Assembly: GCF_902459465.1 (NCBI RefSeq)
Contig: NC_047067.1
Span: 4,588,001-4,652,000, forward strand
Direction of reading: 5' to 3'
Length of the DNA stretch: 64,000 nucleotides
Origin: Asterias rubens
Lineage: Eukaryota
Shown here: one piece after another, positions 3,001 to 33,361 of the stretch
Position numbering within the stretch: position 1 is the stretch's first letter
Layout of the letters: every line of letters starts with the position of its first letter
Notes under the pieces: model-generated
The model's database searches: none
The model's input: only the letters and a program-made list of their open reading frames with translations
What the model was told of the DNA's origin: nothing
Position numbers and translations under genes: made by a program

Positions 3001-4923
3001 ACATTTTGAGTTCTGTGTTTTCCTGTGTGAAGTACAGGTCAAACTTAAGTTGGGGGCGTTGTCTCCAAGATCTGTGAGGACTTCCCAATACCACACAGCT
3101 CACTGTCTCAGTTTTATTAGATCCAAGCATTAAGGCGTGTGTTTTCTGTTGCAAGAATCTATTTGGAATAACTTAAAGCTTAAGGGCAAGAGAGGAGACA
3201 AGTCTGGGGAGGGATCAACAACTGTAAGTTCAAACTTTTGTGTATTTATATTCTTTTGGATTCAGACTGGCACACAAGAACAAAGGTTTTGACAAAATAG
3301 GGAGAGCTATTTTGTTTACGTTGCAAAAAATGTTTGCATTGTAACATTCTAGTTAAACAAACTTTCAGGCGACCCAAAATTTGTTAGGGGAAGTTTAGTT
3401 TACTTGTGTTCACCCCCCCGCAACATAACAACCTCATCCCTGATAATGTAACATTAACATTCCAATATAACAACAGACATTTGGGTAGTGATTAGTTTAG
3501 TAAGGTTAGTCTGTTTTGCTACAATATTACAATGTTATATAGAAAAGTTGCTGTTCAGCAACTTTAATTTTACATTTTGATATGGAAGGTATGAAATAAG
3601 AGAGTATTTTTTGCCTCAAATCCTATATAGAGTATTTTTAGTTATTCATTTTACATGTGACCGTACCTTTGTATAACAAGGGCAGCGATTCCTTTTCTCT
3701 TGAAGAAACTGGCAAGTTTACTTTTGAGTTTGGGGTCATTGCACTTTGAGCCCCACACAACATCTCCTTCAACTGTTGCTTCCATGCTGCAATAAAAAAA
3801 TCCATAGCCATGATTATTTTAAGAAAGTGGTAAAATCAGGCAATCTGGTCAAATAGTCTGACAAATGGTTGAATATTTTGCACAATTTTTACATACAAGA
3901 GTCATATTAACCCGCTGGTCTAAAACGTTCGGGAGGATGGAGGGTTCTGATTATCGCAAACTACCAAACACTAGAACTGATTATTCAATAACTACCTACG
4001 TTCATTGCTTGGTGATTCTAGCCAAAGTGTAGCTAAATGTAAGTAAAGTTCTTTGCAAGTCACTTACTGAAGGTGCGATTGCTCTTTTGAAGGGTGTAAG
4101 GGGACTTTTTGGTGAAGTGGGGGATATGGTCAGAACCAGAAGGGCAGATTTCCCCCAAACACTTGCGCACAGAGAGATACAAATAACCAATAAACACCAA
4201 GCAGACTGAACTATAACGGTTTTAACAACATAAAAAGTCTTCTGTAGCAGGATGCTCTTTCACTTCAGTCCAAATGTTTTTCTTCTTGCATAGCCCACAT
4301 TTTCTGCACCGCTTTGCCCAAAATGTGGAGTAATCTTTCCCCGAACATATCATGTCAACAGTCCACAGGCGCTGACAATGTTGAAAGTAAAATAATGCTT
4401 ATTAATTAAAGTTTAAAACAAATATAGCGCTTTGCCTTTGTCAACTCGAACATTCTTTAAATTTTTAATCTTCATCAACTCAAGACAACAAACCAAACAA
4501 AACAATAATTTAAGAAAGCACTATCTTTTTACTAAAGACTTTAGCTTCAGAGTTCTCAATGGTCTCATCTACGATCTATTCTAAGACCTCGTTAGCTTTT
4601 CACTTGACTAGTTTGTACACAACACACTGGACTAGCCCAGTCGTAGACTAACTAATAGAAAATGTAGACTACACAAATCCCTACCCATCCAAAAGCACTT
4701 CAGCAAGCTGTGCATGCGATTCCAATCCCAGTCGGGTTTTCATTGCGTCCCATCGCTCCAGCTGATTCCCAATCGCCACCTGCCGCAGTCGACTACTCCT
4801 TGGTCTCCTGGACGTAGTAGATTCGGAATTAACTGACGATTTTCTCCTCCGAGTTCGACCAGGATTGGTCTCGGTTAAAGGAGAAATCGGGGCGATTTCG
4901 ACCTCATCAGAACACTCCTCCAT
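1..4923 (-). CDS. C2H2 zinc-finger gene A (3' incomplete; continues left of the window), with ZNF692/ZNF653-like N-terminal motif
   Basis: Exons joined by hand with GT-AG sites and consistent phases: 4923-4685 (caacATGG; MEECSDEV...RWDAMKTRLGLESHAQLAEVLLDG), 3786-3667 (120 nt; two frames open, less certain), 2357-2117 (ARKAATPKP...RHGLKK), 1664-1408 (AWLGRHLKG...acidic/basic), 379-<1. The last exon has CRKC-x12-HWQTH, an atypical CPLC-x9-HTACH and the start YLCEEC. Extra small exons between 4684 and 2358 are not excluded. Confidence 0.8.
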
Positions 4924-6463
4924 GTTGAACTGGCCCAGAGTGGACAAGAGGTGGCGCTGCATTGTAAACAAGAACATGCGGTTTTTTGTATTGATTTCTT
5001 TTATGCGCAAAAAGGGAGGGGCCGGGCGTTTGCGGTCACGAAAGAGCCATTAACAAAAATCACCAATTAACTCTGAATATGTGGCACTTTCAATGGGTTT
5101 ACCCAGACAAACATTTTTGTTTGATAATAGCTATTGTTAGAGTTTCTTAAAGGATTTGGTCGTTGCGGATTCTTTGTCGTAATGAGACCAGATAAACTTT
5201 GATGCGTATGCGATCCGCAGAACTTTTTATGAGCATCCAATTCACCGAGTTTAAAAGTGGGTCCGTTCACTATGCTTTGAAAGAGCGAGGGCGCTATACG
5301 ACAAGAGTTTTATGTTTTGAACTTTTTTAGGCGACAATAATAGTAGAACAAAACCTAATACTAATTAATGTGTCATTTCAAACAAGGGCTATGATTTCAA
5401 ACTAACGGCTTGTAATTTTATGAACCTCCATGGTTTATCATACAAATTTCTCGGCAGGAATTTTTTTTTATTGATTTCAAAAAGAACATCATCTGGTCCT
5501 CTTTCTAGATTAGAAGAGGGCTTTGGAATTAAAGACACAACTGAGTAAATTTTTCAATCACTTTGAGGGAAAATTTGTATTATTGCAGGTTTTTGTTGCT
5601 TTTAAACCTCAAGTGGCCCCATTCTCAAACCATTCATAATTGATTACTGTTTGTAAAGTCACCGTTTGCATGGAGCCATGCTTAATGAACAACACTCCAT
5701 TCTAAAACTTGTTATTTGATTTTACATTTTTGTCGTGGACTTTATGTGGAAATGTAATTCTGCAAAACTTGTTGATTTTGTAATGAGTCAGAAAGAGGGC
5801 AAAGCTACAGCTAACTGCAACAACTGTAAGTGACCAAATCTAGTTGGCTTCACTGTTAAGGCAAATGCAAATCCTTTGTTTAGTGTAGACATAGTCCACC
5901 AGCTCCTCGGAATGTGCCTAGGCCATTAAACCTGATCATGGAGGTAGAAATAGAACTCCATGACCTGACTGAGATTCTTTGTTTTACTTTCAAAACAAAT
6001 ATTTTCTCTTCAGTCAAGAAACTTCACAGAAATCAAAACAAATACAAGAAACAAATTTTACATAATACAGATGTATGAATACGTTATTCATTCACAAAAA
6101 CAGATGTTACAAAACAAATACAACTTATTTTTTTTATTTTTTTTTTTAGACACAAAACATTAATTCACTTGGATTGATTTTATGACTAATTGGATTTTCG
6201 TTGAAAATAATGGAAACAATCACCAGAAATAACAATTTTACTTTTAAGGGAAGTTAACGTGAATGTATGTCTCATTGCAAAATAGGGGAAACAAGAAACA
6301 CAATTGTTGAGCTCGTTGGTGTAATACTACTTGTATTTAAACATAAACTTAAAGGCACTGGCGCACCTTTGGTATTTACTGCCAAAGACCAGTATTCTCA
6401 CTCGCTGCCAAAGTGTACGTTTTAGGACCACAATTCAGTTTTTGTTTATTTGCTAAGTGTCTT

Positions 6464-31348: not shown

Positions 31349-31434
31349 CCCAACACTCCTATACAAAACAAGTTATCCACTATTAAGTAGCGATGTGATG
31401 AAGAACTGACGCCTGAAAATTTCTTCACTTCATC

Positions 31435-33361
31435 ATGGAAACAAGAAATGGGACTTTTGTTTTACACTCTGAACTTGCCAATCGACTCGTGGATCTGCAG
31501 AAGTCAAGTGGATTTAAAACACCTGAAGCATTTGTGCAGCATTTGTTTTCATTAGAAGAAACAATAAGGTAACAAGTATTTTGGAATATCAGTTATCTCT
31601 GTCCTTACTCTCTGGTTATACTTGAAACTGTGCATGGTGGGGATGTAATCTATTTACTAAATAATCTAGTAAAGGTTTGCAGACTTCCACAATAATGAAA
31701 TGTGTCTTTCAAATTTTGTTCAGTTAATATAAAAAAATAGATTCAATAACTTATTATTATTGAACATTATTATTATATCACAACTCAATATGCTGGATAT
31801 ATTACAGGTAATTCTCACCACCAAGACTCTGTGTCAGCTGTTCTAGCTGCTTGCCTTGGAACATCACCAGCAGACAGTTAAACAACAGACACTATATAAC
31901 GACCCTGCATGTATTAAACGGACTGGTTAAGAACTCGTCGCTTCCCTTAGTTATAACATGGAGCAACTGCTCCATGGTTATAACATGTATGTTTGGACCT
32001 TTAAAGTTTAAGAATCAATTCGATTACAGGTGGACAACCATGATTTACATTCTTCTTTTTTCAGGAAAAAAGACAGGATCAAAAAAAGTGTCTAATTATA
32101 TAACATTTTTAGTATTTCTTCTGAAAGCAAGGAATAGTTTTTTTAAAGTTCAAACTCATTTTTAGATTAAATATATATAGTATAATTCCATTTTAGGACT
32201 ATTCCATTTCATTACAGAACAAACCGACTTGAGTTTGCTACACTACTTGCCGGAGTAGAGCAGCCCTGGTTTGAGAAAAATTCATCTAACTCTGGAAAAT
32301 CAAGATCTCTTGGGGTTCAAGTTAACTTGTGCTGCAGGAGCAGACTTAGAAAAATCCCTAAAGAATCAGTAGCGTTAACGAGTACTTCCGAGGAGGAATC
32401 CTCAGATGAAAGTGCAAGTGACGAGGAGGAGGAGGAGGTTGATTTGAAAAACAGACGTGACACACAAAAAAGAGACTTCAAGCCAGCGGGTGTAAAATCA
32501 AGAGGTGTCACCATCAAATTATTAAATAAAAACAAACCCCCTGAAGTGGGACATCAATGCAATGAATGTGGAAGGAGCTTTAAGCTGAAAGTGAGCTACT
32601 TGAATCACCTCCGTGTCCATGTCCGAGAGGATTCGACCCTTCAGTGCAATTTATGTAATGTGTCCTTCACCAATAAGTGGAACCTAGGTCAGCACATCTC
32701 AGTGAAACATCCCGAGCAAGTGCACAAAGCAAAAGAGAAAACTCCACCAAAAAAATTATTGTGTCATATCTGCGGCTGTGCAATGAAATCCCAGCAGACA
32801 CTTAAGTCTCATCTTCGCACACACTCTGCTGATAAACCTTACCAGTGCGTCCACTGTTCAAAGACTTTCAAGTGGGCATCCGCGTTGGCATACCACATAA
32901 GGACGCACACGGGTGAGCGCCCCCATCGCTGTCACAAATGTGACAAGGCGTTTACTAATCGGTCAGACCTGACCAGGCATCAGACTGTTCACACTGGTGA
33001 GAAGCCGCACAAATGCACCCAGTGTGATAAGGCATTTACGCAAGGTCATTCATTGACAGCTCATGTGGATAGATATCACCGGCGGCGTGCACAGATATTA
33101 TCTCCCGGTGCGATTGGTCCAACAAAAACTGTCTCACCACATCAAAAACAAAAACCACACATCATCAGGTTTGTCCAAACTTCCCCTCCAATGATGTCTT
33201 TAGTCGTCGATCCAGTTCATATTCAAACTAATTTGTTAATGCAGGAGCAGGCTCATATTGAAGCCAATCTTGGGTTAGGTGACCCATTAGGGGGCCAAGT
33301 GCATAACATGGCTGAACGTGATTTGGCGGAGACCATGGTTAACATTTTACCAGCTTCATGA
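31435..33361 (+). CDS. C2H2 zinc-finger gene C (6 fingers, ~425 aa)
   Basis: Exon 31435-31568 (METRNGTFVLHSELANRLVDLQKSSGFKTPEAFVQHLFSLEETIR, AG|GTAAC) joins 32218-33361 (alternative in-frame acceptor at 32197). Acidic SEEESSDESASDEEEEE patch, then six C2H2 fingers with SADKP/TGERP/TGEKP linkers; TGA at 33361. Confidence 0.88.

What the first reader, a model, noticed from the sequence alone, without database searches (positions are those of the whole stretch)
4685..31568. Three clustered C2H2 genes share a gapless N-terminal helical motif in the first coding exon (candidate KRAB/ZAD-like effector module)
Seen: the motif aligns without gaps. A (4685-4790): VAIGNQLERWDAMKTRLGLESHAQLAEVLLD. B (~16710-16810): FSDSKAYGEWTDYRSRSGFSTNDEAMMHLLS. 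C (31455-31555): VLHSELANRLVDLQKSSGFKTPEAFVQHLFS. Pattern: [WL]-x7-G-[LF]-x-[ST]-x3-h-h-x2-L-[LF]-[DS]. In each gene it lies in the first coding exon, is followed by a phase-2 intron, and is separated from the fingers by acidic or low-complexity sequence. The finger arrays themselves are unrelated in layout. From memory, copy A resembles the N-terminus of vertebrate ZNF692/ZNF653 (RIRLGGHMEQWCLLKERLGFSLHSQLAKFLLDRY). Inference: an exon-encoded helix-turn-helix dimerisation or co-factor module shuffled onto diverse ZF arrays, analogous to KRAB, SCAN or ZAD. Echinoderm ZNF expansions largely lack those domains.
Basis: partly seen in the sequence, partly recalled or inferred. Interest (0 to 1): 0.75.

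Follow-up and report, generated by a model that had tools for sequence, protein, structure and literature searches.

The report
Hidden pairing domain on zinc-finger genes
Three neighbouring starfish zinc-finger genes each begin with a small domain that has no entry in the domain catalogue Pfam. The same domain appears at the front of vertebrate ZNF692 and in CENP-V, and its predicted shape looks most like the bacterial ribbon-helix-helix pairing and DNA-binding unit. The link is solid for one gene and only statistical for the other two.

Summary
All three peptides are at the stated places, each in the first coding exon of a C2H2 gene, and each exon is followed by a phase-2 intron. Copies A and C match NCBI protein models. 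Copy B is confirmed by RNA contigs that join exon 1 to the finger exon.

Copy A belongs to a real conserved family of about 40 residues that has no Pfam model. Sequence search finds it in a hemichordate zinc-finger protein, a shark protein and FAR1/ZSWIM3_N-type proteins, usually as two copies. Language-model and fold searches add ZNF692 and CENP-V.

B and C resemble each other well above background. HMMER does not link them to A. A position matrix built only from A-family copies ranks B second and C eleventh of 25,405 window positions, and profile-profile alignment beats 400 of 400 shuffles. C's nearest language-model clusters are the same ZNF692-type clusters as A's.

Six fold or shape searches with A's AF2 model and Atlas models of A and C list mostly ribbon-helix-helix proteins (CopG, NikR, MazE, ParD, plant TCP), none individually significant. 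A two-copy AlphaFold test was inconclusive.

The best reading is a diverged, shuffled, probably ribbon-helix-helix-like dimerisation module. It is not KRAB, SCAN or ZAD. It is new in this context, and its function is untested.

The parts
4685..4923 (-). Gene A, first coding exon. The start codon is at 4923, taken from model P0129. The phase-2 donor GG|GT follows 4685.
   Evidence: the N-terminus of P0129 equals the window translation. phmmer gives 100% identity to P0121 and P0122.
4687..4809 (-). Copy A of the domain. It has an arginine-rich arm (4780-4809) and a core (4687-4779) made of a strand-like V-A-I-G, helix 1, a G-L-E-S turn and helix 2.
   Evidence: The family alignment A1 has invariant G, R, W, L, A and L. 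AF2 predicts helices at 30-41 and 46-62 of the 76-residue segment, with 10-residue block means above 90 only over residues 31-50, falling to 86 over 51-60 and 56 beyond.
3667..3786 (-). Gene A, coding exon 2. The first base completes the Gly codon, and the sequence continues MEATVEG...
   Evidence: The remaining acidic and finger exons lie at lower coordinates and beyond the left edge of the window.
16607..17005 (-). Gene B, first exon. The coding sequence starts at the ATG at 16953. The phase-2 donor is CA|GTAAGT.
   Evidence: RNA contigs X1 record 1, X2 record 7 and X3 record 13 cover it and continue into the downstream exons.
16711..16803 (-). Copy B of the domain (residues 51-81 of the exon-1 peptide).
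   Evidence: Matrix rank 2 of 25,405. Only 1-2 of 57,450 control positions reach its score. hhalign finds the same register, with 6 of 250 shuffles reaching the score. The listed differences in the related species within residues 55-80 are synonymous only.
15697..15968 (-). Gene B, exon 2. It is serine- and acid-rich and ends at a GC donor.
   Evidence: RNA contig pieces cover 15697-15963. The acceptor and the GC donor were read.
14835..14910 (-). Gene B, exon 3 (76 nt).
   Evidence: The 76 contig letters between the exon 2 piece and the exon 4 piece, together with the depth in bin 14840-14953. The splice sites were read.
9844..13909 (-). Gene B, last exon. It holds a long array of widely spaced, internally repeated C2H2 fingers.
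   Evidence: The ORF is listed. Pfam hits zf-C2H2_3rep and zf-C2H2_4. An RNA contig piece ends exactly at 13909.
31435..31568 (+). Gene C, first coding exon. The phase-2 donor is AG|GT.
   Evidence: P0001 (Asterias amurensis model, 425 aa) begins with this peptide.
31459..31551 (+). Copy C of the domain (residues 9-39 of P0001).
   Evidence: Atlas: the top feature hit is 'ZN692 protein (Fragment)', and the shape neighbours are RHH_1, ParD, TacA, NikA and VapB. Matrix rank 11 of 25,405. B-C Smith-Waterman score 46.
32218..33361 (+). Gene C, second and last coding exon. It holds an acidic serine-rich linker and six to seven canonical tandem C2H2 fingers.

Best explanation
The three first exons encode diverged copies of one small N-terminal domain. 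The domain has a basic arm, a short strand-like segment with alternating hydrophobic residues, a helix, a Gly/Ser-capped turn and a second helix, about 40 residues in all.

Copy A is a clear member of a conserved animal family that has no Pfam model. Sequence search finds the family, usually as two copies per chain, in a hemichordate zinc-finger protein, a shark protein and FAR1/ZSWIM3_N-type proteins. Language-model and fold searches add the N-terminus of ZNF692-type proteins and CENP-V. B and C are much more diverged relatives, close to each other.

The fold is most probably ribbon-helix-helix-like. Such units exist only as pairs, in which two strands form a two-stranded ribbon and the four helices pack together. 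The module would therefore make single-copy proteins (A, B, C, ZNF692, CENP-V) form homodimers or mixed dimers, while two-copy proteins could pair within one chain. It might also add a second DNA-contacting surface next to the fingers.

Shown: the family exists, A is a member, B and C resemble each other, the gene models are correct, and there is no Pfam model.
Inferred: B and C are homologous with A, the fold is ribbon-helix-helix, and the domain dimerises.
Untested: any DNA binding or effector role.
For: A family:
- phmmer of exon 1 against 1.84 billion representatives gives 8 hits at E<1e-3, all over the same 38 residues. Six of those hits carry two copies.
- Alignment A1 has invariant G, R, W, L, A and L.
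- The partner domains differ: C2H2, ZSWIM3_N, or none.

Link to ZNF692 and CENP-V:
- Atlas feature hits score 0.84-0.87 with 176-190 shared features. Structure hits include zinc finger protein 692 isoform X6 (TM 0.57) and CENP-V.
- Foldseek against Swiss-Prot finds CENP-V at 30-32% identity.

B and C:
- B-C Smith-Waterman score 46, shuffle p=0.0004, and 0 of 3,482 control windows reach it.
- hhalign of A1 against B+C scores 17.4 with P=0.007, and 0 of 400 column shuffles reach it.
- A gapless matrix built from A-family copies only ranks B 2nd and C 11th of 25,405 positions.
- In 57,450 positions of 119 zinc-finger proteins, B's score is reached 1-2 times and C's 38-40 times. This also holds with starfish A left out of the matrix.
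- C's top two Atlas clusters are among A's top three.
- In a related species the listed differences in B's helix core are synonymous only, while the flanks carry 7 replacements and in-frame indels.

Fold:
- AF2 predicts two helices; 10-residue block means exceed 90 over residues 31-50 only, dropping to 86 and then 56 toward the end of helix 2.
- Ribbon-helix-helix proteins dominate every fold search. In PDB Foldseek about 22 of 27 hits are of this fold.
- An independent VIA-wide search puts NikR first, followed by MazE6, AmrZ, TCP, TacA, ParG, ParD and PrpA.
- AFDB clusters, Swiss-Prot and the Atlas shape search agree, for example RHH_1 at 1.3 Å rmsd over 38 residues.
- C's Atlas model matches this fold with TM 0.56-0.68.
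- For B, the only named feature hits are RHH_1 and DUF7557.
Against: - An HMMER profile of the A family gives B no hit, and gives C 0.8 bits in another register.
- A-B and A-C pairwise scores are not significant. C alone against A1 is not significant either, with 61 of 250 shuffles reaching its score.
- B and C lack most of the invariant A-family residues. G, Q, R and K are missing from both, and C also lacks W.
- No fold hit is individually significant. Foldseek E-values are all above 0.2 and VIA Z-scores are at most 3.4.
- The strand is not predicted in the monomer model.
- The two-copy AF2 test gave pLDDT 47 and no strands.
- No ribbon-helix-helix model in Pfam or NCBIfam, and no PHROGs family, hits any copy.
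- Several copies have Asp or Glu at the would-be DNA-facing strand position, which argues against general DNA binding.
- A helix, Gly turn, Ser cap, helix pattern is a common structural motif, so part of the A versus B/C signal could be convergent.
- The B+C profile also gives a weak hit to a GspK helical motif, E=0.56.
Confidence: 0.55

Rival explanations
1. Only copy A belongs to the ZNF692/CENP-V-type family. B and C share a separate, starfish-specific N-terminal motif. Their fit to A reflects a generic helix, Gly turn, Ser cap, helix pattern rather than common descent.
For: The HMMER profile of the A family does not score B or C. A-B and A-C pairwise scores are not significant. B and C lack most invariant A-family residues. 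The search with C's N-terminus finds only itself. The B+C profile weakly hits an unrelated helical motif in GspK.
Against: The A-only matrix ranks B 2nd and C 11th of 25,405 positions, and such scores are rare in real zinc-finger proteins. hhalign beats 400 of 400 shuffles in the same register that MAFFT finds. C's top language-model clusters are the ZNF692-type clusters. In all three genes the motif is in the same place, the first coding exon of adjacent C2H2 genes, and is followed by a phase-2 intron.
Confidence: 0.22
2. The module is a real shared domain but not a ribbon-helix-helix dimer. It is a monomeric two-helix docking unit which, with its arginine-rich arm, recruits a partner or directs localisation, as reported for the N-terminus of ZNF692 (NPM1 binding and nucleolar targeting).
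For: Deleting the ZNF692 N-terminus, which holds an R-rich motif and a nucleolar signal, reduces NPM1 binding (PMC10956046). An arginine or lysine run precedes many of the copies, including A, both hemichordate copies and the first copy of three FAR1/ZSWIM3_N-type proteins; B and C do not have one. AF2 shows only two helices. All fold scores are weak.
Against: The conserved hydrophobic-x-hydrophobic-Gly segment before helix 1 has no role in a bare two-helix unit. Having exactly two copies per chain in six family members fits a unit that must pair. Two independent aligners and four libraries put ribbon-helix-helix proteins on top.
Confidence: 0.2
3. The three-way resemblance is chance. The reader picked a register by eye among low-identity helical peptides.
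Against: B-C is far above real-protein background.
Confidence: 0.03

Closest known systems
N-terminal region of ZNF692-type zinc-finger proteins and of CENP-V (no Pfam entry, no name found)
   Same: Copy A shares the about 38-residue core signature with relatives fetched here. Its nearest Atlas clusters and shape matches are named ZN692 / zinc finger protein 692 and Centromere protein V. Foldseek aligns CENP-V at 30-32% identity. C's top feature hit is the ZN692 fragment cluster.
   Different: The starfish finger arrays and tails are not shown to be orthologous to ZNF692. B and C are far more diverged. The literature treats the ZNF692 N-terminus only as an R-rich NPM1-binding and nucleolar signal, not as a folded domain. 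I did not obtain ZNF692 or CENP-V sequences to align directly.
Ribbon-helix-helix superfamily (CopG, Arc, MetJ, NikR, ParD, ParG, MazE, TacA)
   Same: The element lengths and order match: a strand-like segment, a 12-residue helix, a 4-residue Gly/Ser turn, and a 15-17-residue helix. The two helices superpose at 1.3-2.7 Å rmsd over 35-38 residues. These proteins dominate all fold searches. Two-copy chains recall single-chain tandem members of the superfamily (this comparison is from general knowledge).
   Different: No sequence-model hit was found. The strand and the dimer are not predicted. The scores are not significant. The setting is an animal nuclear protein fused to C2H2 fingers rather than a small prokaryotic repressor or antitoxin. 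Acidic residues at strand positions in several copies argue against DNA reading.
Plant TCP domain (a ribbon-helix-helix-like eukaryotic DNA-binding domain)
   Same: It recurs among the fold hits: PDB 7vp2, 7vp3, 7vp6 and 5zkt, and TCP and PCF entries in AFDB. It is a eukaryotic precedent for this shape in transcription factors.
   Different: There is no sequence relation. TCP is plant-specific, has a long basic region, and is the sole DNA-binding domain of its proteins.
SCAN, ZAD, BTB and KRAB (N-terminal modules of C2H2 proteins)
   Same: The position is the same, before the fingers and after an exon boundary. The likely role is oligomerisation (as for SCAN, ZAD and BTB) or partner recruitment (as for KRAB). 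The module is also combined with unrelated finger arrays.
   Different: There is no Pfam hit to any of them. The domain is much smaller, about 40 residues. No large lineage-specific expansion is seen. It also occurs on non-finger proteins.
GspK/ComEA-type helical motif (Pfam T2SSK)
   Same: Weak matches to C (E=0.16) and to the B+C profile (E=0.56) over an I-V-D-x-R-x-x-x-G-F-x-S-x-x-D-F-like stretch.
   Different: The matches are far below threshold. The following Gly-Ile-Gly hairpin of such motifs is absent. This motif does not appear in any fold search. I treat it as a chance match.

Membership tests
ZNF692-N / CENP-V-N type domain (unnamed) | Significant sequence match to family members over the about 38-residue core | tested here: met
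   Copy A only. phmmer E-values run from 1e-5 to 1e-3 against 1.84 billion representatives for the hemichordate, shark and ZSWIM3_N-type proteins. Local jackhmmer gives 51-75 bits per copy.
ZNF692-N / CENP-V-N type domain (unnamed) | The same match for copies B and C | tested here: inconclusive
   HMMER gives no hit. The gapless matrix ranks them 2nd and 11th of 25,405 positions, with control frequencies of about 3e-5 and 7e-4. hhalign gives P=0.007 with 0 of 400 shuffles reaching the score; B alone 6 of 250, C alone 61 of 250.
ZNF692-N / CENP-V-N type domain (unnamed) | Invariant residues G, R-W, L, A and L-L, plus the Ser/Thr-Asp-Glu helix cap | tested here: inconclusive
   A has all of them. 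B keeps W, the Ser/Thr cap, Glu-Ala and Leu-Leu. C keeps the residue before W (Arg), the Thr cap, Glu-Ala and one Leu. Both lack the strand-end Gly and the Gln.
Ribbon-helix-helix superfamily | Strand-helix-helix topology of about 40-45 residues | tested here: inconclusive
   The two helices are well predicted in their core (block means above 90 over residues 31-50, lower toward the end of helix 2) and have the right lengths. The preceding segment has an alternating hydrophobic pattern but is modelled as coil. Ribbon-helix-helix proteins top all fold searches but without significance.
Ribbon-helix-helix superfamily | Obligate dimer with an intermolecular two-stranded antiparallel ribbon | tested here: inconclusive
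   Only a proxy test was possible. AF2 on a natural two-copy chain (P0124 residues 1-165, 8-row alignment) gave pLDDT 47 and no strands. No multimer tool was available.
Ribbon-helix-helix superfamily | Gly-x-Ser/Thr/Asn turn between the two helices | tested here: met
   The turns are A G-L-E-S, B G-F-S-T and C G-F-K-T. The Ser/Thr cap is conserved across the family, while the Gly is present in only some copies.
Ribbon-helix-helix superfamily | Match to a curated ribbon-helix-helix sequence model (for example Pfam RHH_1) | tested here: not met
   No ribbon-helix-helix model in Pfam or NCBIfam, and no PHROGs family, hits any of ten copies at E<=10. It is therefore filed as 'works like / looks like', not as a proven member.
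Ribbon-helix-helix superfamily | DNA binding through the ribbon | not testable with these tools
   Asp or Glu at the outward-facing strand position in several copies makes general DNA reading doubtful.
KRAB / SCAN / ZAD / BTB | Match to the family's Pfam model | tested here: not met
   No hit in any of the three N-termini at E<=10, and no hit in the full-length relatives at E<=0.01.

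The most novel reading that the evidence does not exclude
Animals have an unrecognised family of ribbon-helix-helix domains. It sits at the N-terminus of ZNF692-type zinc-finger proteins, in CENP-V and in FAR1/ZSWIM3_N-type proteins. 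It acts as an obligate pairing unit, within one chain when two copies are present and between chains when there is one, and in some members as a second DNA-reading head. In the starfish, three adjacent finger genes carry diverged copies, so their products could form a small network of homo- and heterodimers that combine different finger arrays.
Probability: 0.4. Interest if true: 0.8.

Novelty: new variant of a known kind. Interest (0 to 1): 0.62.

Why it matters
C2H2 proteins are the largest class of animal transcription factors. Their N-terminal modules (KRAB, SCAN, BTB, ZAD) decide how they pair and what they recruit.

A further module, one that is conserved from starfish and hemichordates to vertebrate ZNF692 and CENP-V and has no catalogue entry, would change how those proteins are read. 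ZNF692 is currently described as having only an arginine-rich linear motif at its N-terminus, and the front half of CENP-V has no assigned fold.

If the fold is ribbon-helix-helix, it would be a rare animal example of a mainly prokaryotic pairing and DNA-binding unit. It would predict dimerisation of ZNF692 and CENP-V, which can be tested directly.

For the starfish locus, it suggests that three neighbouring genes with unrelated finger arrays descend from, or borrowed, one head exon.

Tried and rejected
- **Pfam, NCBIfam and PHROGs scans.** Scans of the three N-termini and seven other copies found nothing usable.
- **PDB sequence searches.** Searches with A, with A1 and with the B+C profile gave only spurious weak hits: a ZBTB24 finger, GspK and FlgK. 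The GspK/ComEA-type reading was rejected because the match is below threshold, the hairpin is absent, and it never appears in fold searches.
- **HMMER profile of the A family against B and C.** This was negative.
- **Word-indexed homologue searches.** These were unproductive. C residues 1-60 found only itself. The 15-row domain alignment found one shark fragment. As a result I could not fetch ZNF692, ZNF653 or CENP-V sequences to align, and I did not type them from memory.
- **AF2 on a natural two-copy chain.** This was meant to test pairing within one chain. The model was low confidence and gave no answer.
- **Extra copies in the window.** None was found. A half-match in gene C's C-terminal tail (matrix rank 5) has a non-helical first half and was dismissed.
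- **Literature.** No paper in the library links ribbon-helix-helix with ZNF692, CENP-V or animal zinc-finger proteins. The survey of zinc-finger evolution (PMC10547256) does not mention echinoderm N-terminal domains.

Full report
**What is there**

The window comes from a sea star of the genus Asterias. The finger exon of gene C is 98% identical to an Asterias amurensis protein.

A is at 4687-4779 on the minus strand, B at 16711-16803 on the minus strand, and C at 31459-31551 on the plus strand.

The gene models hold.
- **Gene A.** The NCBI model P0129 (887 aa) starts at the ATG at 4923. It runs through the motif to a GG|GT donor after 4685 and resumes at 3786.
- **Gene C.** The model P0001 (425 aa) joins 31435-31568 to 32218 onward.
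- **Gene B.** Transcript contigs from three RNA runs of a related species lie as pieces on 16607-17005, 15697-15963 and 13909 downward. The 76 contig letters in between fit exon 3 at 14835-14910. Exon 1 is therefore spliced to the finger exon, and the frame stays open through all four exons.

All three introns after exon 1 are phase 2. They lie 1, 35 and 5 residues after the motif, so the intron position is not strictly conserved.

Acidic or serine-rich linkers separate the motif from finger arrays of quite different layout.

**Copy A is a real, conserved domain with no Pfam model**

phmmer of A's exon 1 against 1.84 billion representative proteins gave eight hits at E<1e-3. All of them cover the same 38 residues. 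Besides the starfish protein itself, the hits are:
- a Ptychodera flava zinc-finger protein;
- a shark protein with no other domain;
- four intronless proteins with a FAR1/ZSWIM3_N head.

Each of these six proteins carries two copies of the motif.

The 13-copy alignment has invariant G, R, W, L, A and L, and a conserved Ser/Thr-Asp-Glu helix cap. In many copies, though not all, a run of basic residues lies upstream.

Pfam has no model over this stretch in any of these proteins.

Atlas searches with A name its nearest clusters 'ZN692 protein (Fragment)', 'zinc finger protein 692 isoform X6' and 'Centromere protein V'. Foldseek aligns CENP-V at 30-32% identity.

**Do B and C belong?**

Evidence against:
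- An HMMER profile of the A family does not score B, and scores C at 0.8 bits in another register.

Evidence for:
- B and C resemble each other well above background, with a Smith-Waterman score of 46 and shuffle p=0.0004. None of 3,482 windows from 119 real zinc-finger proteins reach that score.
- hhalign of the A-family profile against a B+C profile finds the same register with P=0.007. None of 400 column shuffles reach its score. B alone is marginal (6 of 250) and C alone is not significant (61 of 250).
- A gapless matrix built only from A-family copies, scanned over all 25,405 positions of the six-frame translation, ranks A first, B second and C eleventh.
- In 57,450 positions of real zinc-finger proteins, B's score is reached once or twice and C's 38-40 times. 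This also holds when starfish A is left out of the matrix.
- C's two best language-model clusters, out of 7.7 million, are the ZN692 fragment cluster and an 84-residue chordate cluster. Both are also among A's top three.
- In the related species' B transcript, the listed differences inside the helix core are synonymous only. The flanks carry seven replacements and in-frame indels. The list is incomplete.

I read this as probable but unproven homology, at about 0.75. B and C are close to each other and far from A.

**Fold**

With the 13-row alignment, AF2 predicts a 12-residue helix, a four-residue turn and a 17-residue helix; 10-residue block means exceed 90 over residues 31-50 and fall to 86 and then 56 toward the end of the second helix. 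The preceding V-A-I-G segment is modelled as coil.

Every fold search puts ribbon-helix-helix proteins on top.
- PDB Foldseek: TCP-DNA complexes, CopG, NikR and MazE make up about 22 of 27 hits.
- An independent VIA-wide search of 48,161 chains: NikR first, then MazE6, AmrZ, TCP, TacA1, ParG, ParD2 and PrpA.
- AFDB clusters: CopG, MobC and TCP.
- Swiss-Prot: NikR, CopG and TCP.
- Atlas shape search: RHH_1 at 1.3 Å rmsd over 38 residues, plus NikA, MobC and VapB.
- C's own Atlas model matches RHH_1, ParD, TacA, NikA and VapB at TM 0.56-0.68.
- For B, the only named feature neighbours are RHH_1 and DUF7557.

None of these scores is significant on its own. Foldseek E-values are above 0.2 and Z-scores are at most 3.4. 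That is expected for a 40-residue unit but is not proof.

Three further points count against a firm call. No curated ribbon-helix-helix sequence model hits any copy. The strand does not form in the monomer model. AF2 on a natural two-copy chain was too poor to say anything.

Three features favour the ribbon-helix-helix reading over a bare two-helix unit: the element lengths, the alternating hydrophobic strand-like segment, the Gly/Ser turn, and the recurrent two-copy architecture. I put the fold assignment at about 0.55.

**Mechanism**

If the fold is ribbon-helix-helix, the unit cannot exist alone. Single-copy proteins would pair through the ribbon, and two-copy proteins could pair within one chain.

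On a zinc-finger protein this would double the finger arrays on DNA, as SCAN, BTB or ZAD do. Acidic residues at the outward strand position in several copies make a general DNA-reading role doubtful.

The literature knows the ZNF692 N-terminus only as an arginine-rich NPM1-binding and nucleolar signal (PMC10956046). That fits the conserved basic arm and is the basis of the main functional rival, a docking unit.

**Comparison and novelty**

It is not KRAB, SCAN, ZAD or BTB.

There is no evidence for a large KRAB-like expansion.

No paper in the searchable library links ribbon-helix-helix to ZNF692, CENP-V or animal zinc-finger proteins.

I therefore class it as a new variant of a known kind: an unannotated animal domain family with a probable ribbon-helix-helix-like fold in a new setting. 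A's membership is shown. B and C's membership, the fold and the function are inferred.

Noticed in passing
window 14156-14611 (in intron 3 of gene B); similar ORF translations at 7347-7583 (-) and 30168-30398 (+): This is a very high-copy interspersed repeat. RNA-run contigs pile up to summed word depths of 10^5-10^6 with many rearranged joints. Near-identical peptide strings (CAFRCLISRPQILN...) recur in three ORFs of the window. It is probably a SINE- or MITE-like element.
   Followed up: partly
window 15695-15696 (-): Intron 2 of gene B uses a GC donor (G|GCAAGT), not GT. The exon end at 15697 is fixed by RNA contigs from three runs.
   Followed up: yes
window 21612-22613 (+): This 334-residue ORF is the C-terminal half of a reverse transcriptase (Pfam RVT_1, E=3e-12). 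It lies in the transposon-rich stretch between genes B and C that other notes of this scan describe.
   Followed up: partly
P0123, P0126, P0127, P0128 (ENA assembly ERZ25878582, large eukaryotic contigs): These are intronless genes encoding a FAR1/ZSWIM3_N head followed by two copies of the A-type domain. One of them lies beside a LINE-type ORF with endonuclease and reverse-transcriptase domains. This hints that the domain may travel with proteins derived from transposases.
   Followed up: partly
window 9844-13899 (-): Gene B's finger exon is built of internally repeated units. Each unit is a linker plus one unusual finger of the form C-P-H-C-V-(C/H)-(R/W)-F-x-(Y/F)-R-Q-(G/S)-L-W-R-H. Pfam reports zf-C2H2_3rep. 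It looks like a recent tandem expansion inside one exon.
   Followed up: no
window 33250-33342 (+), C-terminal tail of gene C: The second half of a 31-residue stretch (…A-E-R-D-L-A-E-T-M-V-N) matches helix 2 of the A-family matrix (rank 5 of 25,405). The first half is Gly/Pro-rich, so this is probably chance.
   Followed up: no
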